This document shows, piece after piece, positions 1-25,057 of a stretch of DNA of 64,000 bases. Location: NCBI RefSeq assembly GCF_020745735.1, contig NC_083409.1, positions 12,833,259 to 12,897,258 on the forward strand, given 5' to 3'. Numbering within the stretch: position 1 is the first letter of the stretch; each line of letters starts with the position of its first letter. Made by a program: the position numbers and the translations under genes. The notes beneath the pieces are model-generated. The model ran no database searches. It saw nothing but the letters and a program-made list of their open reading frames with translations, and had not been told where the DNA came from. This stretch comes from Hemiscyllium ocellatum. Taxonomy: Eukaryota.

Positions 1-30
1 GATTCAAGGTGGAAGGAGAGAGATTTGTAC

Positions 31-79
31 CTGCGATACAGAATGCCAGGGGCCAGATCAGCTGGATGTGTGAAATCAT
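31..79 (-). CDS. IGKV: Leader exon 1 of a second, oppositely oriented kappa-type Ig light-chain V gene (MISHIQLIWPLAFCIA-G, phase-1 donor); the V exon lies beyond the left window edge
   Basis: Reverse complement of 12216-12264 with one substitution (TGT ATC vs TGT GTC). ATG at 79-77, GCAG|GTACAA donor at 31/30. The 30 visible intron bases match 12265-12294. Confidence 0.88.
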
Positions 80-139
80 GGTGTGTGCTCCTGTCCCTGT
101 GCCTGGTTCCTGATAAACTCTCCCTTCACTGGGCTCTGC

Positions 140-234
140 TTTATAAAGCTGCAGCCTGTGAGAGTCTGACTGGGTGTTCCTCAGTATGTAAATGGCATCA
201 GGCAGAGAGAGCCACGTCAGCCCCTCACACTTCC
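140..234 (-). promoter_or_regulatory. Promoter of the left (minus-strand) V gene: TATA, variant octamer, CRE-like element, Ets/PU box
   Basis: TTTATAAA 140-147; ATGTAAAT 186-193 (ATTTACAT on minus); ACGTCA 214-219; CACTTCC 228-234 (GGAAGTG on minus). Mirror image of 12058-12155. Confidence 0.7.
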
Positions 235-2379
235 TTCTCTCGCTCTCTCGCGCTCTCTCAGAGAATCATTGATGTGAACAACATTGAATGAGGCCATTTA
301 GCCCATTGTGTCTGTGTGAGTAAACAAAGATCTGATGACACTAATCCCATCCTCCAGCTCTTGACCTATCACCCTGGGGGCTACAGCAACACAAGGGAAT
401 ATCTAAACACTGCTCCAGTGTCACGAGAGTTTGTGACTCAACCAGCCTTTCAGGCAGTGAGTTCCAGACTCCCACCACCTTCTGGGTGAAAACATTTCTC
501 CTCAATTCTCCTCTCACTCCAATTTGACTGGGCCTGGACTCACTCAAGTTCAGAAGGATGAGAGGGAATCTGATTGAGATGTATAAAATTCCAACAGGGC
601 TGGGCAGAGAGGAGGTTTCCTCTGGTTGGGAAGTCTGGAATCAGGGGACTCAGTCTCAGGGGGATAGAGGGTAGACCATTTAGGACTGAGATGAGGAAAC
701 ATTTCTTCACTCAAAGGGTAGGACAACTGTGGAACCCAAGGAACTGAATAAATTCAAGAAAAGGAGAGAGATAATTGTTTTGTATTTTAACAGCATGAAG
801 GGAATGGGGAGAAAGCAGGAATATGGTTTTGAGATGGAGGATCAGCCATGATCATACTGAATGACAGAGCAGGCTCAAAGGGCCGAAAGGCCTACTCCAG
901 TTCCGAGTTTCTGTGTCCATGTCTGTGTTACCTGGGACACAGGTTATTGAGTACTTTACTGATATATAAAGTGCCTTCTTACCCACGCTATCACTGCCCC
1001 AAATAATCTTATCCCCCTCTATCATGTCCCCTCTCAGCCTTCACTGCTCCAAGGAAACAATCCCAACCTTTCCAAGATTTCCCCACAGCTGACCCTCCAT
1101 CCCAGGCAGCATCTTGGTAAATCTCTGCACCCTCTCAAGTACAGTCACATCCTTCCCAGAATGTGGTGACCAGTACCTATCCACCTCTCTCTCTCTCTCT
1201 CTCTCTCTGTCTCACATCTGCCACTTCTTTCTCTCTATCCCTCTCTCTCCTACTGTTAATCTCTTTCATGTTCTCTCTCTCTCTCACTCTGTCTCATAGC
1301 CACACTCCCCAATTCACTCATGCTTTCTCACTCCATCTCATAATTTTTATTTTTCCATCTCTCACTGTCTCCATAACTCCTTCCCCCTTTCGCTTCAATT
1401 TAAATCCTCTGTTTATCTCTCCTCTCTATACCTCCCTCTGTCTCTCTCCCTCCCTCTCTGTATTCCCAATCTACAGTCGCACTCCCTCCCTCTCTGTCAT
1501 TCTGTTTCTAATCATACTCATGTCTCTCACTTTCTCTCTCTCTCTCTCTCTCTCTCGCTCTCTCTGTCTCTCACACACACACACACACACGTACAGACAC
1601 TCACCCTTTGTCTCTGACTCACTTCTCTCTCTTTCTCACAGTGTCCCAGGTTGTGGCAGTTGAATTCAGGATGAATCTCCCTCTCTCTGCCCCACTCATG
1701 GATGTTAACCCTTGACCCCAGAAGCATGTTTTCTCCGAGAGTAAGGCCCCATTTTCCACATTGACCTGGATTTGGCCTCTCTCAGAAAGATGGCTAGATT
1801 CTTGTCAAATGAAGGGCAGTTCTGTGCTTTTGGCCTGTTCTCACTGGGGACTGGTTTGGACACAAAGCTCATTCCATGAAGGCCCTGCAGAGAGAGGAGA
1901 TCCTCAGGCCATCAGTGTGAGCTGGGCGGGGGGGGGGGGCGCAGCACAGGTTCTGACCCACTGATCCAGCCTGTCCATTCACAATATTTTCCAATCCCTT
2001 CCCCTCTCCTACCCCTCTCTTTCCCTTTCCATGATCAGTCTCTGAGTCAGGGTGTTTTACTGGGATGTGGGTTGAACCATTACACAGTTACAACAGAAAG
2101 GAACTGAACCCCACACTCACCTTGGAGTCCATGATGCACTGGACTCTCCTACAGAGTCCAGTAAACATGGCCTCCTTCCTGCAAGAGCCTCCACTAGAGA
2201 CCAGTAAACATGGATCTCCTTCTGACTGGATCCTCCAAGACAGATCAATAAATATGGGCCTCCTAATCACTGGAACTTCCAATGGAGATGAGTAGATGGT
2301 TGAGTTTTTGAAGAAGTAAGCAAGAAGATAGGTAAAGATGGAGTAGTACACTCTGTCTACATGGAGTTAATACAAGGTT

Positions 2380-3520
2380 CCCTATGGTAGACTGCTCAGT
2401 AAGATTATATCACACAGGATCCAGGGAGAGCTCACCAATTGGATATAAAATTGGCCTGATGATAGGAGGCTGAGGCTGGTGAGAGAGGGTTGTTCTTCAG
2501 ACTGGAGGCCAGTGACCAACTGCCTGTCAAAAGAATCGATCCTGGATCCACTGTTGTTCATCATTTATATGAGTAATTTGGATGAGAAAATAGCAGGAAT
2601 GGTCAGTAAGTTTGTGGCTGATGTTAAAATTGTTGGCATAGTGGACAGGGAAGAAGGTTATCCAAGAGTGCAATGTCATCTTGATCAACTGGGCCAGTGG
2701 GTCAACATATCCAGATGGAAATTTTGATAAATGGAAGGAGTTGCATTTTGGGAAGACAAACCAGGGCAGGAATTACACAATTAATGGTAGAGCCATGGGG
2801 AGTGTTGTTGAACAGAGAGACTGAGGGGTACAGGTACATAGTTCCTTGGAAGTGGGGTCACAGGTAGACAGGGTGGTGAAGAAAGTATTTGGCATGCTCA
2901 CCTACACTGGTCAAAGCAGGGAGTACAGGAGCTGGGACATCATGTTACAGCTGTACAAGGCATTGGGAAGGCCACATTTGGGCACAGTACATTTCTGCTC
3001 ATCCTACTCTCAGAAGGAAGTTATGACAGTGGTTTGAATACAAGAAAGATTAACAGGGATGTGACAAAGATTGGAGGATTTGAATTACAAGATGAGGATG
3101 AATAGGCCAAGATGTTTTTCCAAGGAATGCAGGAGATTGAGGGGTGACCTTATAGAGGTTTATAGAATCATGAGGGTCATAGATAAGGTGAATAGTCAAA
3201 GTCTTTTCCTCAGGGTAGGAGAATCCAGTACTAGAAGGAGTAACTTAAGTTGAGAGGGGAAAAAATTAGTAGGAAACTGAGAGGCAGCATTTTCACACAG
3301 AGGTTAGTGTGTATGTGTAATGAGCTGCCAGAAGAATTCGTAGAGGTGAGGACAATTACTACATTTCAAGGACATTTTTACAGGAACATGGATAGGAAGG
3401 ATTTAGAGAGAATTGAGCCAAACACATGCAAATGGGACTAGTTCAGTTTTGGATACTTGGTCGGCATGGATGAGTTGAGCTGAACGGCCTGGTCCCATGC
3501 TGTAAACCTCTATGACTCTT
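2380..3520 (+). mobile_element. CR1-type LINE, 3' part of ORF2 (RT C-terminus) and 3' UTR, degenerate
   Basis: Frameshifted fragments DWRPVTNCLSKESILDPLLFIIYMSNLDE..SKFVAD, RRLRGDLIEVYRIM, FTQRLVCMCNELPEE. Boundaries approximate. Confidence 0.8.
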
Positions 3521-5650
3521 TAATGATGTATACATGGACCACCTTCCAATAGACACCAATAAACATGGACCTCTTTCCACTGGAACCTCCAATAGACACC
3601 AATAAACAGGGACCTCCTTCCCACTGGATGCTCCAGAAGAGACCAGTAAACATGGCCCTCCTTCCCTCAGTACTATCCAGCACCTGAGCTGCAAACCCCA
3701 CATCCTCTCCATCACGTATGCCTCTTATTTCAATCTCAACAACATTGTGTCTGCACTACCTCGCCCCCTTGACCACAGAAACCCTAATTCCTGCTCGTCC
3801 TGCTCCCTAACTCTATGATTCTAATGTCCTCTCCTAGCTTCCTAAAGCCATATTCCATAAACTCCAATTTGTCTGATATGGAGTGGGCCCTTCCCTGTCT
3901 TATCCATCTCTCAATCCAGAATGACCCCTGACCTCACTGCCAGCCAATTGCCACCATGGCCTCCCTCCGTCTGTGTCCTGCTGCAGACTCACATTCCCTC
4001 CCTCCCCCTTCCATCTTCTGTCTCTGGTCTCCTGCCCATTGCTGCTTGCTCCATCCCACCATTGACAGCAGAGCCTTCAGACCCCTACAGCATGCTCTCG
4101 GACTTCCTGCCCTTGATCCCTCCCCCTCTGAATGGTTGTGCTATTGAATATACTGTTCAATCCCATCACTTTTGGTTCACTGTTCCCTTGCCATTGATTT
4201 GCTGAATTATTCCTCATCAGTAAATCTAGTCTGGCCTGTTCCCTGAGTTGGTTCAAGAGAGTTTTCCTTGAGAAAACACTCTTCTGTAAACTGGGTTGTC
4301 TGTTTCTCCCAGTCTTTGTGTAAAGGTGAGTCTAAGTATGTGTAAGCTCTAAAACAGCACAGACAGAGGTCACTGGGTTAATTGCGACTGTTAGTCAAAT
4401 GAGTCCAATGAGTCCCATTAACCCAGCCCTTCCTGTATAACCCTGCAATTATTTCCTTTTCAGCTATTTCTCCAAATGCCCTTTTGAAAGTTGCTGTTGA
4501 ATCCACTTCCACTCACCTTGCAGACAGTCATCATGAACTCGCTGGATAAAAAATGTTCCTATCTTCTCTCTTGTGCTTTCGACTCTTTCTGAAATGTGTG
4601 CCCTTGGGTTACTGACCCTCCTGCCTGGAGAAACAATTTGTCCTGTATTTACTGCATCCAAACTCTCTAATTGTGAACCCCTCATTGAGTGAGACCTATT
4701 TCCAGCACAGGGGGAGAACATTCAGCCTGTCAGGGAAATGCTGTCATTTCATGGAGCAATCCAGTCAGTCCCACCCTCTCCCCTACTCGACCCCCAGGGC
4801 CTTGCAGGTTTATTTCCATCAAGAGCCCATCCAATCTGCCATTGCAATCACTGAGTGTCTTCACCTGTCACACCTGAATGGGCACAAATTTCCAAGACTT
4901 TGACAATTGCTGCTAAAATCAAAGTTCTTTCTGACATTCCATATCTCTTGCCCAACAGAATGTAAGATAATCTCAAAGGGAAGACAGGATTTTGTCTCCA
5001 CACGGTCTGTGCTGTGGTCACTCTTACTGATACTGTCATGGACAGATACACCAACAGCAGGTTGGTGAAGGTGATAGTGAGTATGTTTTTCCCTCTTGTC
5101 GGTTCCCTCACCCCCTGTCCCAGGTCCAGTCTCGCAGCTGAATCAGGTGGAGCGTGACCAGTTTGCTCAGTAGTGATGCTTCTGAGCAGCTTTTGATGGT
5201 GGACTTTGAAGTCCCTTACTCAGGGTATATCCTGCATCATTCCCATCCTCAGTGCTTCCTCCAAGTGTTGTTCAACATGGAGGAGGACTGACTGCTCAGT
5301 TGAGGTTGGAGGGGAGGGCGGTGCTATGTGGTAATCAGCAGGAGGTTTCCTTCCCCATGTTTGACCTGCTGTCATGAGGCTTCATGGATTCCATAGTTAA
5401 TGGTGAGGACTCTCAGGGCAACTCCCTTCCGACTGTACACACCACTGTGTTGCCTTCCCTGCTTGGTCTATCCTGCCAGTTATAAACTGAACGAGGGAAC
5501 AATTCTGTGCAGGTTTCACACCTTGGAGACAGAGCTGCTGCTGGATTCTGTTTCTGATCTCCGAGTGCAGGCGTGTGTGTTTGTGAGAGAGTGACTGACA
5601 CTTTTTCCAAAACTGTGCTGTTTCTGCAAAAAATAAATCCTAGAACCAGC

Positions 5651-5898
5651 CTCCTGTGCTGTCAGATTCCAGGGAGAGCAGACAGTTCACAGTTTTCTCC
5701 CGTCTCAGTAACAAACACCCAGCTGCTCCGAGCTCCTTGTTTCACTTCCTCTTTTGGTGAAGTTTCAACCTTGCGATCTGACAGTCTTTGCAGTTATTTT
5801 TTACACTGGGGCTTTCTGCTGTGGTCAGAATCTCTAATAATAAGTGTCCAATCAGTGACAATCACAGCAGCTAAGAGCAGTCAGGACTGAGGAGCCAG
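5651..5898. repeat. Left arm of an inner inverted repeat (partner 6784-7031), non-TE-like, containing an Ets-IRF composite element
   Basis: Reverse complement of 6784-7031 (ORFs 5573..5890+ and 6792..7109- end in near-identical peptides). GTTTCACTTCCTCT at 5739-5752 (AGAGGAAGTGAAAC on minus); E-box CAGCTG 5720-5725. Confidence 0.9.
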
Positions 5899-6783
5899 TG
5901 TCCCTGTGAAGAAATAAAGCTGAAAGTTCCACAAAAGAAGCATTGATTCAGATCTTACACTCCACAACCATCTGATGAAGGAGCAGTGCTCCAAACGCTA
6001 ACACTTCCAAACAAACCTGTTGCATTAGAACCTGGTGTTGTGTGATTTTTAACATTTACATAACAGGCCAACACCGGCATCTCCAAATCATGGAATTGGA
6101 TGGAATTTGAGAAATGCATTTACCTTGGGTCAGGAATGGGTCTGTCTAGGAGACAGAGAGGAAGGATAATGTGCGTGTGTTCCAATGAGACAGATGTGAG
6201 TAGTGGTATTCCCAGGGATCTGTGCTGGGACCTCAGCTTTTCACGATATTTCTCAATGATTTGGATGAAGAAACAGAGAGCCATATATCCAAGATTATTG
6301 ATCACACTGAGTGAGGCAGCTTGGAGGAGGTCACAGAGATAGGGAGGGTGGAAGAACAGGGAGCAGATTGAGAACAAGGATGAGAATTTAAAAATCGAGG
6401 TGTTGCTGGATCAGGAGCTTATGTCAGTCAATGAGGATTGTGGTGGTCATGGTGGGGTGGGGAGGTTTGGGCAGGGGTATGGGGTGGACTTGGTGTGAGT
6501 TTGAAAACAGACAGCAGAGTTTGGGATGAGCTGATGTTTACGGAAGTCAGTGGCTGTGATGTGGGCCTGGATATCATTGGAATGGTCACAAAAACATGGT
6601 TGAGATTTTCAGTGGCTGATAATTGTGATGTGGAGGATTTGGGCCTCAAATCAGCCCCAAAGATGAGGCCAAAGTTGTAAAGAGTCTGGTTGAGCAGCAG
6701 ACAGTGCTCAGGGAGAGGGATGGAGCTTGTACCAGGAGCTGAAGAGGATGGCTTTGATCTTCCCAATGTGTTTCCCAGTGAGC

Positions 6784-7031
6784 CTGGCTCCTCAGTCCTG
6801 ACTGCTCTTAGCTGCTGTGATTGTCACTGATTGGACACTTATTATTAGAGATTCTGACCACAGCAGAAAGCCCCAGTGTAAAAAATAAATGCAAAGACTG
6901 TCAGAGCACAAGGTTGAAACTTCACCAAGAGAGGAAGTGAAAGGAGGAGCTCGGAGCAGCTGGGTGTTTGTTACTGAGATGGGAGAAAACTGTAAACTGT
7001 CTGCACTCCCTGGAATCTGACAGCACAGGAG
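6784..7031. repeat. Right arm of the inner inverted repeat, containing an Ets-IRF composite element
   Basis: GGAAGTGAAA 6933-6942; CAGCTG 6957-6962; reverse complement of 5651-5898. Confidence 0.9.
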
Positions 7032-7633
7032 GAGGCCATTCAGCCCATCATGCCTTTGAATGACCCAGTGAATCCCACTGCTCCCCTCTCTCTCCCCATA
7101 ACCCAGCAAATCTTTCCTTTACAGTTCAATCTCCAATTCTCTCTTATAGACCTCATGTCCACAGAGTGAGACTGCCCTGAACCTGGGCTTCAAATTGGCA
7201 TCTCATTCATTCATTGGGAGACAAACTGCCTGGGCTAGGAAATGGAGTTCAGGACCCTGAACATTCCCTCTCCCCTCCTGAGGAACACTTCATTTGGTTT
7301 TGCATATTCACTTGTGGGAAGTGGGCTTCACCGGCTGGGCCAACATTTTTTACCCTGTCCCTAGTTACCCTGGAGAAGGCGGTGGGAACCTGACTTTTTG
7401 ACTATAGTCCACAAGACGTAAGTTGACCCACAATGCCGTTGGGGAGAGAATGCCAGCATTTTAACCCAGCAAGTCTGAGGGATCAGCGACATATTTCCAA
7501 GTCCGGATGCTAAGCTTTTTTGAGGGGAACTTGCAGCTCACAGTGTTCCCATGTATCTGCTGCTCTTGTTCTAAATGGAAGTGAACGTGGGTTTGGAGGG
7601 AAACCAAAAGAACTGCAGATGCTGTAAATCTGA

Positions 7634-7793
7634 GACAAAAATAGAAAGTGCTGGAAAAGCTCAGCAGGTCTGGCAGCATCTGTGAAGAGAAATCAGAGTT
7701 AATATTTCATGCTCAACCTGAAATGTTAATTCTGATTTCTCTCCAAGATGCTGCCAGACCTGCTGAGCTTTTCCTGCAATTTCTATTTTTGTC
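7634..7793. repeat. Near-perfect ~160-bp fold-back built from a Penelope-type terminal repeat
   Basis: 7634-7680 vs 7747-7793: 2 mismatches in 47 nt. Inner arms gagaaatcagagttaatatttca / tgaaatgttaattctgatttctc flank a ~9-nt loop. The motif GCTGGAAAAGCTCAGCAGGTCTGGCAGCATC resembles the terminal repeats at 43810 and 44930. Confidence 0.75.
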
Positions 7794-10700
7794 CATGGGT
7801 TTGGAAGGTGCTATCTGAAGATCAGTGATGAATTTCTGCAGTGCATCTTTTCGATAATACACACTGCTGCTATGGAGCGTCAGTGACGGTGAGTTTGGGT
7901 GTTTTGAGAATGCGATGCCAATCAAGGAGTTTGCTTTGCTCTGGATGGTATCAAGCTTTTTGAGTGGATAAGAAAGACATAGGATACAATCGACATAGAT
8001 AGGAAAGGTTTCAAGGGATATGTGTGAAATGCAGGCAAATAAGATGAGTTCACTTCAGAAAACCTGGTCAGCACGTAGAAGTTTGGCTTAAGGGTTTGTT
8101 CCTGTGCTGTATGACTCTGTGAACGTTGTTGGAGCTGCACCTGTCCAGGCAAGTGGGGAGTATTTGCTCACACTCCTGACTTGGTTGACAGGCTTTGGGG
8201 GATCAGGAGTTGAATTACTGGATGCAGTATTCCTAGCCTCTAACTTGCTCTTGTAACCACTGTGTTTCTTTGGTGAATCCAGTTGTGTTTCTGGTCAATG
8301 GCACCTCAAGAATGTTGATCGTGGGGATTCAGTGATGGTAATAGCATTGATTGTCAAGGGGCGATGTTAAGTTTGTCTCTTATTGGTGATGGTGATTGGC
8401 TGGCATTTGCATGGCACCAATGGGAAATGTCACTTCTCAGACAAAACCTGGATATTGTCCAGATATTGTTGCATTTGCACGTGGACTGCTTCAGTATCTG
8501 AGGAGTTGAGAAGAGTGCTGAGCATTATGCAATCTTTGGCAATCATCCCCATTTACGAGTTTGCCTTGAGTTGCAATATCTGTTTGGAGTCTGTCCTATT
8601 TAGTACGGTGATAGTACCACAAAACACAATGGAGGGGATTCTCAATGTGAAGGTCAGACTTTGTTTCCACAAGGACTGTGTGATGGTCACTCTTACCAAC
8701 ACTGTCAAGGACAGATGCATCTACAGCCACAAGATTGGTGAGGATGGGGTCAAGCATCTTTTTCCATCTTTTGGTTCCAGCTGCAGAGCCAGTCCCTCAG
8801 CTACATCCATGAGGAACCAACCAGCTCGATCAGTAATGCTGCTGCCGAGCCACTCTCAGTGGTGGACATTGAAACCCCCCACCCAGAGTACACTCTCTGC
8901 TGTCATCACCCTCAGTGCTTCCTCCAAATGTTGTTCAACACCCAGGAGAGACTGATTCATCAGCCGAGGGAGCAAGATATCTTGTAATCACCAGGAGGTT
9001 TCCTCGCCCATGTTTAACCTGGTGTCATGAGGTCCAGAGCCAACTTTGAGATTTCCCAGGGTAACTCCCTTCTGGCTGTAGACCACTGTGTCATCAGCTC
9101 TGCTGGGTCTGCCTTTCTGGTGGGACAGGACACATGCAGGGACAGTGATGGTAGTGTCTGGGACATTGTCTGTATGGTTCTGTGAGTATGACAGTGTCAG
9201 GCTGTTGCTTGACTAGTCTGTGAGACAGCTTTCCTGAATTTGGCACTAACTCCCAAATGTCAGTAAGGAGGACAGAGCAGGGTAGACAGGACTGTTTCTG
9301 TCATTGTCTTTTCGGTGTCTAGATCGATGCCTGTGGTCCGTCCGGTCTCATTTCTTTGTTGAAACATTGTCACAATTGATAAAACTGAGAGCCTTGCGCG
9401 GCCATTTCAGAGGGCACTAGAGAGTCAACCACATTGCTAGAGGACAGTGCCGTGTACCCCGGCAGTACATTCCCACCTCCCCCACTTCCCCATTCTGTAT
9501 ATGGAAGGCGGAAGCCTGCCAGCAGGATATTCAACCGCAGGAGCTATCACAGCCCGTGTGCAATTCTGTCCCCACATTAAATCCACACAAATCTTGAATT
9601 CACATAACTCCTTCAATATCCAAACATTCCAAGAATGTTCACAAAGTTGCAGTAAGAGGGATGGGGGAGAGGGTGGAGGAACATAAGAACTAGGAGCAGG
9701 AGCAGGCAATTCAGCCCCTTGAGCCCACTCCACCATTTAATACAATCATGGCTGATCCCATCTCAGACTCAACTCCACTTTCCTGCCCACTCTCCATCAT
9801 CCTTTAACCCATTACCCATTAAATATCTGTCCATCTCCTCCTTGGTGTGAGACAGGGAAGGGACCACTCCATTTCAGAAAAGACTGACCATGGAAGGGGA
9901 AGGAGAGGGGAAGGGATTGGAACATGTTGTGAATGGACAGGATGGGTCAGTGGGTCAGAGCTTGTCCTGTGCCTCCAACGCACGCTGATGGCCTGAGGAT
10001 CTCCTCTCTCTGCTAGGCCTTCATGGAATGAGCTTTGTGTCCAAATCAGTCCCCAGTGAGAATCGGCCAACAGCACAGAACTGCACAGAACTGCCCTTCA
10101 TTTGACCAGAATCTGTCCATCTTCCTGACAGAGGCCAAACCCTGGTCAACGTGGAAATAGGGCCTTACTCCAGGAGAAGACAGGGGTCAAGGGTTAACAT
10201 CCATTAGTGGAGCAGAGCAGAGGGAGATTTATCCTGCATTCAACTGTCACCACCCAGGACACTGTCAGAAAGAGAGAGCAGTGAGGCAGAGAGAGAGATG
10301 GAGGGAAAAATAGTGAGTGTGGGCGTGTGTGTGGGCGTGTGTGTGTGTGAGAGAGAGAGAAAGAAAGAAAGAAAGTGAGAGAGAGAGATAGAGGGACGAG
10401 CATCTGATACAGTGTAAGATATGTGAGGGGACCGAGAGAGTTAGAGGGAGGTAGAAATGGTGAGGCTGAGGGATAGAGAGTGAAACAAGATGTGAGACAG
10501 TGTGACTGAGAGGGATGGAGAGAGAGAAAGAGACAAGGGGAGAGAGAGAGAGAGTGAGAGACAGGATGGGTGTGAGACTAAGCATGAAGAGAGTTGAGAG
10601 GGAGGGTAGGGTTGAGTGTGAGAGAGAGAGATGAGTATGGGTAGATTTATAATGACAGAGAGAGAGGGAGAGAGACTGTAAATTGGGAGGTCGAGAGGGA

Positions 10701-12026
10701 AGGAGAGAGAAAGAGGGAGGAATAGAGAGTGACAGATAACAATTGGAGGCTTTTAATTGAAGTGAGAGAGGGAGCGAGTAACAGAGACAGTGAGAGATGG
10801 AGAAACAGATGATAAGATGGAGTGAGAAAGCATCAGTGAGTTGGAGAGAGTGGCTATGAGACAGAGTGTGTGTGTGTGTGTGAGAGAGAGGGAGAGAGAG
10901 AGAGAGAGAGAGAGAACATGAAAGAGATTAACAGTGGGAGAGAGAGGTAGAGGTAGAGAGAAAGAAATGGCAGATGTGAGTCAGAGAGAGAGAGGGACAG
11001 GTCCTGGTCACCACACTCTGGGAAGAATGTGATTGTACCTGAGAGGGTACAGGGGAGATTTCCCAGGATGCTGCCTGAATGTGAGCTTTGAGCAGTGAAG
11101 GCTTAACAGGGACCTGATAGAGAGGGATAAGATTATTCAGAACAGTGACAGGGTAGGTAGGATGGCACTTTTTACATGAGTAAAAGACTTAAAAACCTGG
11201 TACAGAGATTGAAGGTAACACAGACATGGACACGTAGAAACTTGGAGCAGCAGTAGGCCATTCGGCCCTTTGAGTCTGCTCTGTCATTCAGTATGATCAT
11301 GGCTGTATCAATTTTTGAATGTCATAATTTCTTCGAGGGTCCGTGTGGGCTTGTCGGGCCAAATGGCCTGTTTCCACACTGTAGGCATTCTATGATCTAT
11401 GGCTGATCCTCTCTCTCAAAGCCATATTCCTGCCTTCTCCCCATTCTCTTCAAGTTGTTAAAATGCAAAACAATTATCTCTCTTGTTTTCTTGAATATAT
11501 TCAGTTCCTTGTCCTCCACAGCCTTCAGTGGTAGCGAATTCCACAGGTTGACCACCCTCTGAGTGAAGAAATGTTTCCTCATCTCAGTCCTAAATGGTCT
11601 ACCCTCTATCCCCCTGAGCCTGTGTCCCCTGGTTCCAAACTCCCCAACCAGGGGAAACCTCCTCCCTGCCCAGCCCTGTTACAATTTTATATGTTTCAAT
11701 CAGATCCCCTCTCATCGTTCTGAACACGAGTGAGTCCATGGCCAGGCGAGTTGGAGAATTGGAGAGTGAGAGGAGAGTTGAGAAGAAATGTTTTCACCCA
11801 GAGGGTGGTGGGAGTCTGGAACTCACTGCCTGAAAGGCTGGTTGAGTCACAAACTCTCGTGACATTGGAGCAGTGTTTAGATATTCCCTTGTGTTGCTGT
11901 AACCTCCAGGGTAATGGGCCAAGAGCTGGAGGATGGGATTAGTGTCATCAGACCGCTGTTTACCAGCACAGACACAATGGGCCAAATGGCCTCATTCAAT
12001 GTTGTTCACATCAATGACTCTGAGAC

Positions 12027-12057
<31 letters not shown>

Positions 12058-12155
12058 AGAGGAAGTGTGAGGGGCTGACGTGGCTCTCTCTGCCTGATGC
12101 CATTTACATACTGAGGAACACCCAGTCAGACTCTCACAGGCTGCAGCTTTATAAA
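12058..12155 (+). promoter_or_regulatory. V-gene promoter: PU box, CRE-like element, variant octamer, TATA
   Basis: AGAGGAAGTG 12058-12067; TGACGT 12076-12081; ATTTACAT 12102-12109 (1 mismatch to ATTTGCAT); TTTATAAA 12148-12155, about 60 nt upstream of the ATG at 12216. Confidence 0.72.
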
Positions 12156-12215
12156 GCAGAGCCCAGTGAAGGGAGAGTTTATCAGGAACCAGGCACAGGG
12201 ACAGGAGCACACACC

Positions 12216-12264
12216 ATGATTTCACACATCCAGCTGATCTGGCCCCTGGCATTCTGTGTCGCAG
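12216..12264 (+). CDS. IGKV: Ig light-chain leader exon 1 (MISHIQLIWPLAFCVA-G)
   Basis: ATG in CACCATG context, hydrophobic 16-aa signal peptide, phase-1 donor GCAG|GTACAA; 186-nt intron ending cccctcag at 12450. Confidence 0.95.
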
Positions 12265-12450
12265 GTACAAATCTCTCTCCTTCCACCTTGAATCTTTAGC
12301 TGCTCTCCATTTCACTCCAATTCCACTGACTTGTGATTGAAGGGAAAATGCTGAAACCAGAGGAATGCTCAGTGTCTCCAACAATCTCTCATTTGACCGG
12401 CTCTTTCTGTGACAGTTCTGACTTCACTGTGTTTCTCTCTGACCCCTCAG

Positions 12451-12747
12451 GTATCAGTGGGGACATCACCATGACCCAGTCTCCCCCGGTGCTGTCAGTG
12501 GGACTGGGCCAGACCGCAACCATCACCTGTAAGGCCAGTCAAAGCATTAGCAGCTACCTTGCTTGGTACCAGCAGCAAGAAGGTCAGAAACCCTCTCTCC
12601 TGATCTACAATGCAGCAACTCGATTCACAGGAGTCTCCGAGAGATTCACCGGCAGTGGATCAGGGACCAGTTTCACCCTGACAATCAGCAACGTTCAGAA
12701 TGAGGATGTCGCTGACTATTACTGTCAGCAGTATAGCAGCGGGTCTT
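12451..12747 (+). CDS. IGKV: Leader 2 plus kappa-type (shark type III/NS4-like) V segment, intact: (G)[98 protein letters not shown]
   Basis: Canonical Cys-Trp-Cys, WYQQ and D-x-A-D-Y-Y-C motifs; open frame; followed directly by a consensus 12-spacer RSS. Confidence 0.97.
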
Positions 12748-12775
12748 CACAGTGACACAGAGCTGTACAAAAACC
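12748..12775 (+). other. Recombination signal sequence, 12-nt spacer (V side)
   Basis: CACAGTG (12748-12754) - ACACAGAGCTGT - ACAAAAACC (12767-12775); perfect heptamer and nonamer. Confidence 0.97.
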
Positions 12776-13211
12776 TCAACACGCACAACACCACCTCCTG
12801 GACTGACACATCGCACAGTTACATAAAATGTATAATAATGAACACACAGTCTCACTGCCTGAAGTGATATATCCAGTTAGATCTGAATGAAACTGATCAA
12901 ATTACCCAAAACTGGGATTTCCACTGTCCACGGCACACTCCAGTCCCTGTCGTGTCTCAACGCTCACTGAAGGCCTCTAGTTTCTCTCTTACACTCCATG
13001 GCCACATGTGAAGAGCAGCTGCAAGATTTAACATCGAAAAACAAATTTCACAAACCTCCCGAGCCCAGCTGGAAACAACCCAGAGAGACAGAGAGAGAAA
13101 GACACATGAATGAGGGAGAGACAGAGAGGGGCAGGGAGAGGGTGAGAGTGAGCGATAGACACACAGAGACAGAGAGAGGTTGACAGTGATAAGAGGAAAG
13201 CAGAGAGCTGA

Positions 13212-13250
13212 GGTTTTTGTACAGCCTCTGCACTGGGAGCTCTCACTGTG
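13212..13250 (-). other. Recombination signal sequence, 23-nt spacer (J side)
   Basis: GGTTTTTGT (13212-13220) - 23 nt - CACTGTG (13244-13250). Faces the V RSS, so joining is deletional and excises 12748-13250 (503 bp). Confidence 0.97.
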
Positions 13251-13285
13251 TCTTACGTTCGGTAAAGGAACCAAGCTCAGACTGA
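13251..13285 (+). CDS. IGKJ: Single J segment (LTFGKGTKLRL, phase-1 donor)
   Basis: FGxGT motif; CTG A|GTAAGT consensus donor at 13285/13286. Confidence 0.95.
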
Positions 13286-13659
13286 GTAAGTAAACCTCAA
13301 TCCTCTGTTACTAACCCTGTCAATACTGAAACACACTTTCTAAAATACAGTTGCTGATTTGTTGAAGGTGTTAGTGGGGAGCTGCAGTGAATGAAATGGT
13401 TGATTGAGGAGCACTGTGTCTAACAGGGTGTCCAGCTGTATTTCTTTACTTTCATGCCCTCTTTAAAAAAAGCAAGATATAAGTCAGTAAGTTTTACTCA
13501 CTGTGTGGAGGAGCTCTGTCCATTTACAGCCTGTGGTCCCATTCCTGCAGCATGGAGTGAAATCAGTGAGTAGCCTCCTGCCAGTCTCAGTGTGACGGAT
13601 ACGGGCAGAGTTTGATGTGAGCTCTGGCTCCCTGTCCCAGTCTCTGATCTCACTGACCT

Positions 13660-13695
<36 letters not shown>
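13660..13695 (+). repeat. (CAG)12 microsatellite at the 5' end of the J-C intron
   Basis: Directly read: 12 uninterrupted CAG units. Confidence 0.95.
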
Positions 13696-13697
<2 letters not shown>

Positions 13698-15244
13698 CAG
13701 TGAGACACCGAGCTCCCACCTCCCCCAGCTTTAACTCTGCTCAATCACACAATCACAGAATTGTTACAGTGCACAAGAAGGCCATTCCGTCCATCCTGTC
13801 TGGACTAGCTCTCCGAATGAGCAATTGACTGAGTGTCATTCTCCTGCCTTCTCCCTGTCACCCTGCACATTGTTCCTTTTCAGATAACAGTCTCATTCCC
13901 TTCGGAATGTTTTAATTGAAGCTGCCTCCACCACACTCTCAGGCAGTGCATTCCACACCTTAACCACCCACTGGCTGAAAATGTTTTCCCTCATCTCACT
14001 TTTCTTACTTTTCCAATTACTTTCAATCTGTGGCCTCACAGTCTCAATCCTTTCACAAGTGGAATCATTTTCTCCCAATTTACTCTGTTCCAGGCCCCTC
14101 CTGATTTTGAATTTCTGGAACAATTCTCCTCGCTGCCTTCTCCAAAGACTTGGAGGTGCCGGTGTTGGACTGGGGTGGACAAAGTTAAAAATCACACAAC
14201 ACCAGGTTATAGTCCAACAGGGGGTTTATTTGGAAGCACCAGCTTTCGGAGCATCCCTCCTTCATCAAATGATTGTCAGCGGCGCACCAAAAGCTAGTGC
14301 TTCCACATCAACCTGTTGGACTATAACCTGATGTTGTGTGATCTGTAACTTTCTCCAAAGAAGACAGTCCCAGATTCTCCAATCTATCTTCAGAACTGAT
14401 ATTCCTCATCCCTGGAATGATCTTTGTGCATATGTTTACCAGCTCTACAAAACATTCACCTCCTTCCTGCATTATTCACATTATTTATGTCCCTCATGAT
14501 TTTATAAACCTCTGTAAGGTCACTCCTCAGCCTCCGGCACTTCAGGGTAAAAGATCTCAGCTCTTCCAGCCACTAATGTTCACAGAGTCAGACAGCGTGG
14601 AAACAGATCTTTCAGTCTAACTCCTCCATGCTAACTAGATATCCAAAACTGACCTCATCCCATTTGCCAGCATTTAGCCCACATCCCTCTAAACCCTTCC
14701 TATTCATGTACCCATCCAAACATCTTTTAAATGTTATAATTGTATCCGTCTCCAGCACTTTCTCTGACAGCTCGATCTGGACACGCACCACCCTCTGTGT
14801 GACAAGTTACCCCTTAGGTCCCTTTTGGATCTTTTGCCTCTCATCTTAAACCTATACCCTCTAGTTTTACATTCCCTTTCCCAAGGCAAAGACCTGGGAT
14901 ATACACCCTGTCCATGCCTGTCAAGATTTTATAAACATCTATAAGGCCACCCCTCAGTCTCCGATCCTGCAGGAAAAATAACCTCTTCCGACAGTTCAAA
15001 CCCTCCAGTTCCAGGCAACATCCATGTAAATCTTTTCTGCAGAATTTTAAGTTTAACAGCATCCTTCCTATCACAGGATGATCAGAATTGTCCACGTTAT
15101 TCCCAAAATAGCCTCACCAATTTCCTGTACAGCTGTTAATGATGTCCCAACTCTGATACTTAGTGCAGTGACCAATAAAGGCAAGTGTACCCAACACCTT
15201 CTTCATCTCCCTGTCTCCCTGTGACTTCACTGTCAAGGAATAAT

Positions 15245-15349
15245 GCCCCTGCCCCTGCCCCTGCCCCTGCCCCTGCCCCTGCTCCTGCCCCTGCCCCTGC
15301 CCCTGCCCCTGCCCCTGCACCCTGCACTTGCCCCTGCCCCTGCACCCTG
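15245..15349. repeat. (GCCCCT)n hexamer expansion inside a CR1 fragment
   Basis: About 17 slightly imperfect units; source of the QGQG / AGAG ORF artefacts. Confidence 0.92.
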
Positions 15350-15532
15350 AGGTCACTTTGTTGAGCAACACCCCACAGGGCCCCACCATTAACAGTATAA
15401 CTCCTGCCCTGGTTTGACTTTCCAAAATGCAACATCTCACATTTATCTAAATTGAACTCCATTTGTCACACGTTTAGATCAGAGTGGTGCTGGAAAAGCA
15501 CAGCAGGTCAGGCAACATCCAAGGAGCAGGAA

Positions 15533-15568
15533 AATCGATGTTTCGGGCAAAAGCCCTTCATCAGTATT
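15533..15568 (-). ncRNA. Minimal hammerhead-ribozyme-like motif in a Penelope-type terminal repeat
   Basis: Minus strand reads CUGAUGA-A-GGGC-UUUU-GCCC-GAAAC-AUC-GAUU. Confidence 0.5.
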
Positions 15569-18500
15569 CCTCTAGCCGAAAAGTCGATTTTTCTGCTCCT
15601 CGGATGCTGCCTGACATGCTGTGCTTTTCCAGCACCAGTCTGATCTAAACTCTGGTTTCCAGCATCTGCAGTCTGCACTTTTGTCCATTTGCCACACCTC
15701 TGCCCATTTCCCCAAATGATCAAGGTCCCACTGTACTCTCAGATAAGCTTCTTCACTATCCACTGTACCACCAATTTTGGTGTCATTTACAAACTCGCCA
15801 TAATTCCTATATTCACATCCAAATCATTTATTTAAATGATAAAAAGCCAAGGGCCCAGTCCTTGTGGCACACAGCTGACATCTGATCTCCAGTCTGAAAA
15901 GCAACCACTTACCACCACTCTCTGTCTCCTATCTTGAAGTCATTTTTTTTTTACCCAAATGGCTAGCTCCCCCTGGATCCCATGTGGCCTAATCTTACTA
16001 ATCAGTCTATCATGTGGAACCTTGTCAAATGCTTTGCTGAAGTCTATATAGACAGTGTGTACTGTTTTGCCTACATCAATCTTCTCTTCAAACAATCTCA
16101 ATCACGTTAGTCAGACATGATTACCATGCACAAAACTGCATTGTTTGTCCAAATGCATGTAAATCCTGTCCCTCAGAACTCACTCCAATAACTTACCCAG
16201 CAATGACTTCAGGCTCACTGGATTAGATTTCCCTGGCTTTTCCTTACAGCCTTTCTTAAATAATGGCTAACATTAGCCAACCTCTCTGGTTCTCCAGAAC
16301 CTCACTCATGGCTGTCAATCAGAAACATACCTCAGCAAGGGATCCAGCCATCTCTTTCCTAGCTTTCCACAATGTCCTGGGATACACCTGATCAGGTCCT
16401 GGAGATTTATCTACCGTCTTGCACTTTAAGAAATCTTCTTCTATAATGTGGACTTGTGTCAAGACATTACTATTTATTTCCCAAGTTCCCAAATTTCCAT
16501 GTCTTTCTCCATGATAAATACTGACCTGGAATATTCATTTAAGACCTAAACCATTTCCTGTGGATCCACCCAGAGGTACATTGTTCATCTTCATGGGGCC
16601 CTATTCTCTCTCTAGTTACTCTTTTGCCCTTTTCTTATTTACCATAATTCTACCACTTTTGCCCTTGAGTAAGTTCAGGAATTGTTTGCCCTCCTTCAAA
16701 TGTATCTCGACTATACCTGGTCCACATCCTCTACTATTCTTTTCAGGACTTTCCTGCCAACCTTTGATCCAACTTTATTCAGATCTGAGACATCCATATC
16801 TTATAGAAGCTGGCATTTTCCCCAGTGAAGATGTTTTACCCTGAAAAGGCCTTTGTTCTTTTCTACCGTCACCCTCAACTTTGTGATACAATGATCACTC
16901 TTCCTTAAGTGTCCTCTCACTGACACGTGATCCACTTGGGCCTCCTCATTCCCAAGATCCAGATCTAGCAGAGCCTCCTTTCTCATTGGACTGGAGACAT
17001 GCAGCTGGAGAAAATTCACATGAACACACTCTCACGACTCTGGCCCCTCTGTCCTTCACACTGCTACTACCCCAGTCTATATTCAGAAATTAAAGAAATT
17101 CCACCCCCCCCCCCAACCCCATTTGTAATGACTATTATATTTGCAGGTCACTGTAAATTCCTTGCAAATGTATTCCTCTAAATCCTTCCCATTGGGTGGT
17201 GACTTATTGACTGCACTGATGATTCTGTGGACCTTGGTGTTCCTCTCTGACAGTCCCTCCTGACTCCCACAGCTCTGCCAAGTTAGTTTAAACCCTCTCC
17301 AACAGCACGAGTAGATCACCTCAATGGAGCTCAGTGCCAGCTCTGTTCAGGAGCAACGCTGTCTGGTCTATCCAGGTCCCATTACCCCAGACCCAGTCCC
17401 GATGTCACAAGAATCTAAAACCCTCCCTCCTGGATCCTCTTCCCAGCCCCACAGTCACTTGTGTTATCCTCCTGCTCCTCTTGTCACTTGCCTGGGGCAC
17501 TGGGAGTAACCTGAAGATTCCTACTTTTGAGTTCCTGATGTTATTTCCCTTCTGAGCTCCCTAAATTCTGACTGCAGGACTACATCCCTTTTCTCCCTCT
17601 GTCACTGGGACCGATGTGGACCACGACTGCTGCCTATTCCCCCTCTCCCCTCAGGGTGCTCTGCAGTCGCTCAGTGACATCCTTGACGCTGGCACCAGGG
17701 AGACAACACACCATCCTGGATTCCCATCTGCAGCTGCAGAAACACCTATCGATGCCCTCAGTCTCAAATCTCCTTTTACGATCACTCTTCCAGTCTTGCT
17801 AATACCACCCCACCACCCCACCACCCCTCACCTCCCCTCCCCCCCCCACCACCGCCCCGGCAACCCCCCATTATAGCTGAGTCACCAGTGATGCCAGGGA
17901 CTTGGCTCTGGCTGCACTCCCCAGATGAACCATCATTCTCATCAGGATTCTGAACTGTATCCTGGTTGGAGAGTAGGATGCCTGGGGACTCCTATACTAG
18001 CTGCCTGATCCTTTTGGACTGTCTGCTGCTCCCCCATTCCCTCTCTCCCTGCATACTCTGAGGCTGCAGAGTTACCACATCTAGAAACGTGCTCTCCACG
18101 GAGCTCTCAGCCTCAGAGACGCTCTGCACTGACACCAGCTGCTGCTCAAGCTCCAAAACCCAGAGCTCTAACTGCTGTCACAGACTTCACTTCCTGTACT
18201 CATGGTATTCCAGGAGCTGGGAAACATTCTGAAATTCCCACATGGATGCACACTCTCTCCACTCTTTGTTTGTCTCTTGGCAAAGTTCTGATGACAAACA
18301 GCTCCAGCAGGGCTCACAGTCCAGTGGGTTCAGTGTTCCAGGGTTTTGGGGAAACTCTCCAGAAGTCTTTAAGAAATAGGAGCAGAAATCAGCCATTCAG
18401 CCCATTGAATCTGCTCTGCCATTTGATCTTGGCAGATATGCTTCTCACCCCCATTCTCCTGCCTATTCCACAGGAACGTTCGATCCCCTTCACAATCACG

Positions 18501-24728: not shown

Positions 24729-25057
24729 TCCGTGACAACTCTCAGCCCAAGCTGACCCTGCTGCCCCCCTCCCCTGAGCAGATTAATGCCAAGGACACTG
24801 CCACCCTGGTGTGCCTTGCCAATCACTTCTATCCCGATGAGCTGGAGGTGCAGTGGAAGAAAGACGGTGCAGTCATTTCGGACGGGGTTCAGACCAGCAA
24901 CTACCTGCGAGCTTCGGACAGCACCTACAGTGTCAGCAGCCTGCTGACCCTCTCTGGGTCTGACTGGGAGTCCAACGCTCGCTTCTCCTGTGCCCTCACC
25001 CACGTGACCCTCCCCTCTCCCCTCAGCAAGAGCATCAGGAGATCAGAATGTGTGTAG
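24729..25057 (+). CDS. IGKC: Kappa-type constant exon, intact: (I)RDNSQPKLTLLPPSPEQINAKDTATLVCLANHFYPDELEVQWKKDGAVISDGVQTSNYLRASDSTYSVSSLLTLSGSDWESNARFSCALTHVTLPSPLSKSIRRSECV*
   Basis: Acceptor cttttgtctttcag|TC, in phase with J; C1-set Cys/Trp/Cys; penultimate Cys for the interchain bond; TAG 25055-25057. Confidence 0.97.

What the first reader, a model, noticed from the sequence alone, without database searches (positions are those of the whole stretch)
1..12294. Two kappa V genes head-to-head across a decayed 12.3-kb palindrome
Seen: base 1 pairs with 12294; a second leader exon and promoter point away on the minus strand, with ATGs 12.1 kb apart; outer arms (1-2041 / 9881-12294) and inner arms (5651-5898 / 6784-7031) are nested about a common centre near 6.1-6.3 kb. 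Identity is close to 100% over the proximal ~240 bp of promoter and leader and lower distally, and the intervals between arms are replaced by different TEs. Established: shark Ig genes are organised as multiple V-J-C clusters. Inference: an inverted (fold-back) cluster duplication created divergent genes that may share upstream control, with gene conversion or selection keeping the promoters identical.
Basis: partly seen in the sequence, partly recalled or inferred. Interest (0 to 1): 0.7.

Follow-up and report, generated by a model that had tools for sequence, protein, structure and literature searches.

The report
Head-to-head shark kappa light-chain clusters
Two shark antibody kappa light-chain gene units lie head to head, each with its own conserved upstream control-like block, as an old inverted duplication; the layout is real, but it is an ordinary variant within a large gene family.

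Summary
Bases 1-2041 are the collinear reverse complement of 12294-9881. There is 1 mismatch in the first 235 bp and about 86-88% identity beyond. A second promoter and leader exon point left off the window, with ATGs at 79 and 12216. The inner arms (5650-5910 / 6772-7032) are 95% identical.

A Chiloscyllium punctatum kappa contig (L001) is collinear with the right unit. It shows that both arm pairs are standard parts of a kappa cluster unit: a 349-bp upstream block with EICE, E-box and RUNX motifs, a repeat-laden linker, about 1.7-2 kb of proximal upstream DNA, then promoter/leader, V, J and C.

The structure is an old, asymmetric inverted duplication. The left unit is truncated inside its block, and the 861-bp centre is single-copy DNA of the right unit.

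Constraint explains most of the identity gradient. The promoter/leader block and the upstream block are 92-98% identical across species, against about 80% for their flanks. Extra gene conversion is only suggested (1 difference against 5.8 expected).

An assembly artefact is very unlikely.

The scan has already noted head-to-head kappa pairs elsewhere in this genome. Interest is modest.

The parts
1..30 (-). Left cluster: first 30 bp of the leader intron. The gene runs off the window to the left.
   Evidence: Identical to 12265-12294, with donor GCAG|GTACAA in both copies.
31..79 (-). Left cluster leader exon (MISHIQLIWPLAFCIA..), ATG at 79-77.
   Evidence: One difference from the right copy, at position 37 (Val to Ile). 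The left-specific base appears as a minor variant in contigs of a second study.
80..235 (-). Left promoter block: TATA-like TTTATAAA (140-147) and octamer-like ATTTACAT (186-193).
   Evidence: No differences from 12060-12215. It differs by 2.6-3.9% from three C. punctatum clusters over the 235-bp block.
236..2041 (-). Left proximal upstream arm.
   Evidence: Collinear with 12059-9881 at about 86-88% identity with indels. Also collinear with L001 8367-9846.
2042..3868 (.). Insertion of dispersed repeats (LINE-like), present in the left unit only.
   Evidence: The empty-site alignment restores collinearity with the right arm. Copies lie at 14.6-16.0, 21.5-22.2 and 42.7-43.1 kb and in L001. K-mer depth is very high at 2401-3200.
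3869..3900 (-). Resumed arm homology beyond the insertion.
   Evidence: 3900-3869 against 9850-9881, 90.6%.
3901..5649 (.). Left linker, with no counterpart in the right unit or in L001.
   Evidence: Mostly low k-mer depth. 4954-5469 is a repeat that also lies at 8623-9110, in direct orientation.
5650..5910 (-). Left copy of the conserved upstream block (truncated), with EICE at 5740, CAGCTG at 5720 and RUNX core at 5820.
   Evidence: 95% identical to 7032-6772. 96.3% identical to L001 3373-3615. It lacks the distal ~93 bp of the block. Motifs.
5911..6771 (+). Single-copy centre ('loop'): a repeat fragment at 5964-6089, then the right unit's own further-upstream DNA at 6100-6771.
   Evidence: It contains no inverted self-match. 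6100-6688 matches L001 2460-3033 (75%) and 6679-6771 matches L001 3268-3360 (97.8%).
6679..7032 (+). Right copy of the conserved upstream block (full length, 349 bp), with EICE GGAAGTGAAA at 6933, CAGCTG at 6957 and RUNX core at 6857.
   Evidence: 95.1% identical to L001 3268-3615, while its flanks are 75-84%. Motifs.
7033..9849 (.). Right linker: short blocks collinear with L001 (7033-7293, 9483-9549, 9833-9881) separated by repeats, including a 160-bp hairpin at 7634-7793.
9850..12059 (+). Right proximal upstream arm.
   Evidence: Collinear with the left arm and with L001 8367-9846.
12060..12215 (+). Right promoter block: octamer-like ATTTACAT at 12102 and TATA-like at 12148.
12216..12747 (+). 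Right leader exon (12216-12264), leader intron (12265-12450) and V exon (12451-12747).
   Evidence: Open reading frame with a kappa-like V-set domain. It is 81-87% identical to C. punctatum V domains, and the best non-shark hits are kappa V regions.
12748..12775 (+). V recombination signal: CACAGTG, 12-bp spacer, ACAAAAACC.
13212..13285 (+). J recombination signal (GGTTTTTGT, 23-bp spacer, CACTGTG; 13212-13250) and J segment (13251-13285).
24729..25057 (+). C exon of the right cluster.
   Evidence: C1-set domain, E = 6e-23. Splice phase fits J. The J-C intron is 11.4 kb.

Best explanation
The stretch is the shared upstream region of two kappa-type (shark type III/NS4-like) light-chain V-J-C clusters that lie head to head. 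An old inverted duplication of a whole cluster unit most likely produced the pair.

A unit consists of a 349-bp conserved upstream block with EICE, E-box and RUNX motifs, a variable repeat-laden linker, about 1.7-2 kb of proximal upstream DNA, and a conserved promoter/leader block, followed by V, J and C.

The right unit is intact. The left unit is the truncated copy: it breaks off inside its upstream block and is joined, through a repeat fragment, to DNA that lies 0.64-0.86 kb upstream of the right unit's block.

After the duplication, the unconstrained parts drifted to about 12-14% divergence and gained different insertions and deletions. Two elements stayed nearly unchanged because they are under purifying selection, presumably as the promoter and an enhancer-like element of each cluster.

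Shown here: the anatomy, the collinearity with another species' cluster, and the conservation pattern. Inferred: the duplication mechanism, which copy came first, and any regulatory function.
For: - Arms: they are collinear inverted repeats with a divergent second promoter and leader.
- Right cluster: it is complete.
- Collinearity with another species: C. punctatum contig L001 matches the right unit block by block. 6100-6688, 6679-7027, 7023-7293, 9483-9549, 9833-9881, 9885-10178 and 12041-14142 match L001 2460 through 12080 in the same order.
- Left unit truncated: the left block matches only 243 of the 349 bp. Of the central 861 bp, 672 bp are the right unit's upstream DNA.
- Three-taxon counts: L and R are nearest relatives in every segment. 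The ratio d(L,R)/d(.,C) is the same for the arm (0.69) and the block (0.67), so one history with different constraint fits.
- Constraint on the promoter/leader block: it differs by only 2.1-5.6% among five copies from two species, while V-J spacers differ by 7-20%.
- Mirror geometry: note s1-195872 puts a V-type RSS 453 letters left of the window. In the right copy, 453 bases lie between 12294 and the heptamer at 12748.
- Not an artefact: the window has no N and the arms differ by 12-14% with indels. A contig from a second study bridges 1942-2111. Contigs from another organism match left-arm-specific DNA, with 1 difference in 892-1143.
Against: - I did not read the left V, J and C. Their presence rests on an unchecked note plus the matching geometry.
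- No long read spanning both arms was available, only contigs of 100-500 bp.
- The linkers (3901-5649 against 7033-9849) share nothing in inverted orientation. Direct descent of one copy from the other therefore needs several later deletions and insertions.
- Without the other family members of this genome, I cannot show that L and R are each other's closest paralogues.
- The function of the conserved blocks is untested.
Confidence: 0.75

Rival explanations
1. Gene conversion, either arm to arm or across the family, keeps the promoter/leader (and probably V) nearly identical on top of selection. On this view the identity gradient marks the edge of a conversion tract about 165 bp upstream of the ATG. 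This can be true together with the main explanation.
For: - The promoter block has 1 L-R difference, against 5.7-5.9 expected from the arm and block ratios (Poisson P about 0.02).
- C. punctatum paralogues C1 and C3 differ by 4.7% in this block although their V-J spacers differ by only 6.8%. L-R differs by 0.4% with arms at 14%.
- The 30 bp of intron in the window are identical. The mirrored RSS distance (453) implies no net indel through the intron and V.
- The promoter/leader contigs have several-fold higher k-mer depth than arm-specific contigs. The left-specific base at 37 is a roughly 3% minority, so many copies may share the sequence.
Against: - Fisher tests on the same counts are not significant (P 0.09-0.23).
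- The block is strongly conserved between species and among paralogues in any case, so constraint alone explains most of the effect.
- Only 235 bp of the putative tract can be seen.
- The tool states that contig depth is no copy number.
Confidence: 0.3
2. The pair arose not by inverted duplication but by inversion or juxtaposition of two existing members of a tandem kappa array, or by amplification of an older head-to-head pair that is itself the repeat unit of the array.
For: - Earlier scan notes list several other head-to-head kappa pairs in this genome. One follow-up calls the layout routine in a roughly 200-copy array (I did not check this).
- The linkers of the two units are unrelated.
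- L-R divergence in the arms (14%) is not far below the distance to a C. punctatum cluster (20%).
Against: - L and R are nearest relatives in all three segments compared.
- The left unit ends inside its conserved block, right beside the right unit's upstream DNA. This fits a duplication junction.
- The bamboo-shark cluster L001 has no partner within 3.3 kb beyond its block.
Confidence: 0.2
3. Assembly artefact: a false inverted duplication or a mis-join.
For: The left copy runs off the window, and no long read spanning the structure was available.
Against: - The arms differ by 12-14% with many indels, and their spacers differ.
- The window has no gaps.
- Left-arm-specific sequence and the arm/insertion boundary (1942-2111) occur in contigs of a second study and of other organisms.
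Confidence: 0.03
4. The inner arms are the terminal inverted repeats of a fold-back or DNA transposon inserted by chance near the middle.
For: Two 261-bp inverted arms at 95% identity lie 861 bp apart. They are more alike than the outer arms, and their centre is off that of the outer arms by 0.2-0.4 kb.
Against: - The flanks show no evident target-site duplication.
- The window holds no other copy.
- The right arm is part of a 349-bp block lying in the same place and orientation upstream of a kappa V gene in C. punctatum, at 95% identity, with collinear flanks on both sides.
- The ratio d(L,R)/d(.,C) equals that of the outer arms.
Confidence: 0.03

Closest known systems
Cartilaginous-fish kappa (type III / NS4) light-chain V-J-C miniclusters
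   Same: There is one V with a split leader, a 12-RSS, one J with a 23-RSS about 0.45 kb downstream, and one C1-set C exon on the same strand. An octamer-like motif and a TATA box lie upstream. The literature describes many near-identical family members that share regulatory motifs (PMC2193156, PMC12227049).
   Different: Two units sit head to head only 12.1 kb apart. Older literature assumed shark IgL clusters lie in one polarity and far apart (PMC3014032). The J-C intron here is 11.4 kb.
Teleost IgL clusters with V segments in opposite polarity (zebrafish inversional inter-cluster joining, PMC3014032)
   Same: Neighbouring light-chain clusters lie in opposite transcriptional orientation. The 12/23 geometry would allow the left V to join the right J by inversion.
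   Different: No evidence here for any inter-cluster joining. According to an unchecked note, the left V's heptamer is TACAGTG, which would cripple it. In teleosts the V lies opposite to the J and C of its own cluster; here each cluster is internally co-oriented.
Large genomic palindromes kept alike by arm-to-arm gene conversion (for example primate Y-chromosome ampliconic palindromes; from general knowledge)
   Same: Inverted arms carry paired genes around a short unique spacer.
   Different: The arms here are about 86-88% identical, not over 99.9%. High identity is confined to two short conserved blocks that are equally conserved in another species. The linkers are unrelated.
Mammalian light-chain enhancers with a PU.1/IRF composite site (kappa 3' and lambda enhancers; from general knowledge)
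   Same: The conserved upstream block carries a perfect GGAAnnGAAA composite site, an E-box and a RUNX core. All three are invariant in three copies from two species.
   Different: The block lies upstream of V (5.3-5.7 kb here), not downstream of C. Neither binding nor activity has been tested.

Membership tests
Shark kappa (type III/NS4-like) V-J-C cluster | V-set domain most similar to kappa V regions | tested here: met
   It is 81-87% identical to C. punctatum V domains, and the best non-shark hits are mammalian and reptile kappa V regions at 60-69%.
Shark kappa (type III/NS4-like) V-J-C cluster | V with a 12-bp-spacer RSS and J with a 23-bp-spacer RSS on the same strand, not germline-joined | tested here: met
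   CACAGTG-12-ACAAAAACC lies at 12748-12775 and GGTTTTTGT-23-CACTGTG at 13212-13250.
Shark kappa (type III/NS4-like) V-J-C cluster | A single C1-set constant exon downstream, in splice phase with J | tested here: met
   24729-25057, C1-set with E = 6e-23. The PDB search did not tell kappa from lambda for the C domain.
Shark kappa (type III/NS4-like) V-J-C cluster | The second (left) cluster is also complete with V, J and C | not testable with these tools
   Only the promoter, leader exon and 30 bp of intron are in the window. Note s1-195872 reports an RSS at the exact mirror distance with open V, J and C frames, but I could not read that DNA.
Inverted segmental duplication (palindrome with spacer) | Two collinear reverse-complementary arms, more alike than chance allows | tested here: met
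   About 2 kb of collinear arms (BLAST E = 0 for the proximal 0.9 kb) plus a 261-bp inner pair.
Inverted segmental duplication (palindrome with spacer) | The arms are each other's nearest relatives compared with an outside copy | tested here: met
   The C. punctatum copy is the odd one out in all three segments. Other paralogues of the same genome could not be included.
Inverted segmental duplication (palindrome with spacer) | Physical linkage of both arms confirmed in independent long reads | tested here: inconclusive
   Only contigs of 100-500 bp were available. One bridges 1942-2111, and arm-specific contigs occur in a second study.
Palindrome homogenised by arm-to-arm gene conversion | Near-identity along the whole arms | tested here: not met
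   The arms are 81-96% identical per 100 bp beyond the first 500 bp.
Palindrome homogenised by arm-to-arm gene conversion | A local tract more alike than constraint predicts | tested here: inconclusive
   1 difference against 5.8 expected (Poisson P = 0.02); Fisher not significant.
Fold-back / TIR transposon (inner arms) | Terminal inverted repeats with a target-site duplication, and dispersed copies | tested here: not met
   No evident target-site duplication and no other copy in the window. The arm is part of a conserved, syntenic block upstream of a kappa V in another species.

The most novel reading that the evidence does not exclude
The head-to-head pair works as one divergent regulatory unit. 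On this reading the two conserved enhancer-like blocks, 0.86 kb apart, act on both promoters. The opposed 12-RSS and 23-RSS would allow V of one cluster to join J-C of the other by inversion, giving sharks a form of light-chain editing that they are thought to lack. Local gene conversion would keep the paired promoter/leader/V regions alike.
Probability: 0.08. Interest if true: 0.6.

Novelty: new member of a known kind. Interest (0 to 1): 0.3.

Why it matters
The layout of shark light-chain clusters in the genome is still described as poorly known (PMC12227049). Older work assumed a single polarity and wide spacing (PMC3014032). This pair shows that whole cluster units can be duplicated in inverted orientation within about 12 kb.

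Its more useful result is a by-product. Comparing the two arms with a bamboo-shark cluster outlines what one autonomous kappa unit contains. That unit includes two strongly conserved non-coding blocks: the promoter, leader and leader intron, and a 349-bp upstream block with EICE, E-box and RUNX motifs. Both are good candidates for the control elements of shark Ig clusters.

As a structure the pair is an ordinary product of gene-family expansion, and the scan has seen similar pairs elsewhere in this genome.

Tried and rejected
- Pfam on nine decayed ORFs from the spacers and nearby LINE-like copies gave nothing. The repeats are therefore called repeats only from their other copies and their k-mer depth.
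The first P0008 look-up timed out and succeeded later.
- Read laying returned only short Logan contigs, so it could not test linkage of the two arms.
- The findings search by sequence with the right block was blank. One words query was malformed.
- The PDB sequence search with the C domain did not separate kappa from lambda.
- I first read the inner arms as an unrelated, younger repeat or transposon, because they are 95% alike against 87% for the outer arms and their centre is offset by 0.2-0.4 kb. I rejected this after the cross-species comparison.
- A sensitive search (word size 7) found no further inverted homology between the linkers beyond the 32-bp piece at 3869-3900.
- Literature searches found no description of inverted neighbouring IgL clusters in sharks.

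Full report
**The observation**

A self-comparison of the first 14 kb confirms the inverted repeat. Bases 1-2016 are the collinear reverse complement of 12294-9895.

A global alignment of the two arms gives this profile:
- 99-100% identity for 1-200
- 92-97% for 201-500
- 81-96% per 100 bp after that, mostly 85-93%, with no steady decline

The right arm is about 380 bp longer, because of a 100-bp indel and 237 bp of low-complexity DNA.

The first 235 bp hold a single mismatch at position 37. It changes one leader residue, Val in the right copy to Ile in the left.

Reading both ends shows the same features pointing outward. These are a promoter with an octamer-like ATTTACAT and a TATA-like TTTATAAA, a leader exon, and a splice donor. 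The ATGs are at 79 (minus strand) and 12216 (plus strand). The inner arms are 5650-5910 and 6772-7032, 261 bp at 95% identity. The window contains no N.

**The right-hand gene**

It is a complete, apparently functional kappa-type cluster:

| Part | Coordinates | Evidence |
|---|---|---|
| Leader exon | 12216-12264 | |
| Leader intron | 12265-12450 | |
| V exon | 12451-12747 | |
| 12-RSS (CACAGTG-12-ACAAAAACC) | 12748-12775 | |
| 23-RSS (GGTTTTTGT-23-CACTGTG) | 13212-13250 | |
| J segment | 13251-13285 | |
| C exon (C1-set, E = 6e-23) | 24729-25057 | |

The J-C intron is 11.4 kb and rich in repeats.

The V domain is 81-87% identical to predicted proteins of *Chiloscyllium punctatum*, and the best non-shark hits are kappa V regions. 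The organism is therefore a shark, probably an orectolobiform. The family is the kappa (type III/NS4) light chain, known to exist as about 50 or more V-J-C cassettes with shared regulatory motifs (PMC2193156, PMC12227049).

**The left-hand gene**

Only its promoter, leader exon and 30 bp of intron are in the window.

An earlier first-reader note (s1-195872) reports a V-type recombination signal 453 letters before the window start, with open V, J and C frames. In the right copy, exactly 453 bases lie between 12294 and the heptamer at 12748. The geometry is a perfect mirror, which also implies no net indel through the leader intron and V exon.

I could not read that DNA, so this remains a lead with matching geometry. 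According to the same note the left heptamer is TACAGTG. If so, the left V would be poorly recombinable.

**What the arms are**

The key evidence is a *C. punctatum* contig that carries a related kappa V gene with 10 kb of upstream sequence (L001). It is collinear with the right-hand unit of the window:

| Window | L001 | Identity | What |
|---|---|---|---|
| 6100-6688 | 2460-3033 | 75% | further-upstream DNA |
| 6679-7027 | 3268-3615 | 95.1% (349 bp) | conserved upstream block |
| 7023-7293 | 3899-4164 | 84% | linker block |
| 9483-9549 | 4199-4265 | 88% | linker block |
| 9833-9881 | 4329-4377 | 88% | linker block |
| 9885-10178 | 8367-8651 | 87% | proximal upstream arm |
| 12041-13178, 13082-14142 | 9829-11025, 11046-12080 | 82-85% | promoter, V and J |

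Both pairs of arms are therefore standard components of a kappa cluster unit, not leftovers of a once-perfect palindrome.

The inner arms are copies of a conserved upstream block. Earlier notes of this scan had described such a block on other DNA of this genome (s1-203484, s1-216793, s1-228462), and that lead changed my reading. All three aligned copies keep a perfect EICE (GGAAGTGAAA), a CAGCTG E-box and a RUNX core.

Each block lies upstream of its own gene, in the same relative orientation. The distance from EICE to ATG is 5.3 kb on the right and 5.7 kb on the left.

**Asymmetry and the junction**

- The left block matches only 243-261 bp of the 349-bp conserved block. The distal ~93 bp (right copy 6679-6771, 97.8% identical to L001) are missing or decayed on the left.
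- Contigs that leave the block at 5898 carry on with the reverse complement of 6751-6780. This agrees with other copies being longer than the left one.
- The 861-bp centre has no internal inverted symmetry. It consists of a dispersed-repeat fragment (5964-6089) and 672 bp of the right unit's own upstream DNA.

The right unit is therefore intact and the left unit is truncated. This is the anatomy expected of an inverted duplication with a short single-copy loop. The fold-back mechanism itself, and which copy came first, are inferences.

**The spacers**

The left arm is interrupted rather than ended at 2041. Removing 2042-3868 restores collinearity with the right arm up to 3900/9850. The inserted DNA is made of dispersed LINE-like repeats with copies elsewhere in the window and in L001, and it has very high k-mer depth.

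Beyond that point the linkers (3901-5649 against 7033-9849) share nothing in inverted orientation. The right linker keeps short blocks collinear with L001, separated by repeats. The left linker is mostly low-copy DNA of unknown origin. Pfam did not recognise any of the decayed ORFs.

**Selection or conversion**

I used L001 as a third taxon and counted only well-aligned columns:

| Segment | d(L,R) | d(R,C) | d(L,C) | Ratio d(L,R)/d(.,C) |
|---|---|---|---|---|
| Proximal arm | 14.0% | 20.4% | 19.8% | 0.69 |
| Upstream block | 5.0% | 7.3% | 7.7% | 0.67 |
| Promoter/leader block | 0.4% | 3.4% | 3.9% | 0.12 |

L and R are nearest relatives in every segment. The equal ratios for the arm and the upstream block show that one history with different constraint explains both. 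The block's 95% identity therefore does not mean a younger event.

In the promoter/leader block, 1 difference is seen where 5.7-5.9 are expected. Poisson P is about 0.02, but Fisher tests on the counts are not significant.

Adding two more *C. punctatum* clusters (L002, L003) gives these differences, taken across the five copies for the 235-bp block and among R and the three *C. punctatum* clusters for the other parts:

| Part | Difference |
|---|---|
| Promoter/leader block (235 bp) | 2.1-5.6% |
| Leader intron | 1.6-3.8% |
| V exon | 6-18% |
| V-J spacer | 7-20% |

Paralogues within *C. punctatum* (4.7-5.6%) are no more alike than copies from different species. There is thus no sign of species-wide homogenisation.

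Constraint explains most of the identity gradient. Some extra homogenisation of this pair, or of a subfamily, is possible but not shown. Contig depths hint that many copies share the promoter/leader sequence, and the left-specific base at 37 is a roughly 3% minority. The tool warns that depth is not copy number.

**Artefact?**

An assembly artefact is very unlikely, for three reasons:
- The arms differ by 12-14% with many indels, and their linkers are unrelated.
- The window has no gaps.
- A contig from a second study bridges the arm/insertion boundary (1942-2111, 2 differences). Contigs from another organism match left-arm-specific DNA (892-1143, 1 difference) and the left-specific insertion.

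Physical linkage of both arms on single long molecules could not be tested.

**Comparison with what is known**

Shark IgL genes as V-J-C miniclusters are textbook knowledge (PMC12227049, PMC2193156). Their arrangement relative to one another is described as poorly known, and older work assumed a single polarity and wide spacing (PMC3014032). I found no paper describing inverted neighbouring clusters in sharks.

Within this scan, however, several head-to-head kappa pairs were already noted on other DNA of the same genome. One follow-up judged the layout routine in a roughly 200-copy array (s1-228448, s1-236454, s1-228492, s1-210510). I did not check these.

Inversional joining of the left V to the right J is geometrically allowed by the 12/23 rule, as in zebrafish (PMC3014032). 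Nothing here supports it, and the reported left heptamer defect argues against it.

**Verdict**

This is a real, old, asymmetric inverted duplication of a complete kappa cluster unit. Its apparent nested palindrome reflects two conserved non-coding blocks of the unit, not a decaying symmetry. It is a new member of a known kind, of modest interest.

Its main value is in marking out the unit and its conserved control-like blocks.

Noticed in passing
window 12265-12450 (also L001 10080-10265, L002, L003): The 186-bp leader intron differs by only 1.6-3.8% among the window's right cluster and three C. punctatum clusters. It is far better kept than the V exon (6-18%) or the V-J spacer (7-20%). Together with the promoter and leader exon it forms a conserved block of about 390 bp.
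   Followed up: partly
window 13212-13250 versus 12748-12775: The J-side 23-RSS is much better conserved among clusters and species (0-8% different) than the V-side 12-RSS (7-18%).
   Followed up: no
window 7634-7793: A 160-bp self-complementary hairpin (89%). Copies of its core lie at about 25972, 26709, 43819 and 44938 in the window and at L001 3051-3258, right beside the conserved upstream block. It looks like a MITE-type dispersed element.
   Followed up: partly
window 2042-3868, 9881-9885; L001 4378-8366: The left unit and the bamboo-shark cluster both carry a large insert exactly where the right unit has 9881/9885. They share one element in unit-consistent orientation (73-78%), but their LINE-like parts lie in opposite relative orientation. 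Either the right unit lost an ancestral element or the site is an insertion hotspot.
   Followed up: partly
window 3901-5649: 1.75 kb of mostly low-copy DNA in the left linker has no match in the right unit or in L001. Its origin is unknown.
   Followed up: no
window 13286-24728: The J-C intron of the right cluster is 11.4 kb and is filled with LINE-like repeats (14.6-16.5 kb and 19.7-22.2 kb), so the cluster spans about 12.9 kb.
   Followed up: no
window 392-494 and 11789-11939: A LINE 3'-tail-like fragment (also at 22730-22879) lies about 270-430 bp upstream of both ATGs in both arms. It was therefore already part of the unit before the duplication.
   Followed up: no
L001 1-3268: The bamboo-shark cluster has no second promoter or V within 3.3 kb beyond its upstream block. 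The tight block-to-block head-to-head junction is thus not a universal feature of kappa clusters.
   Followed up: partly
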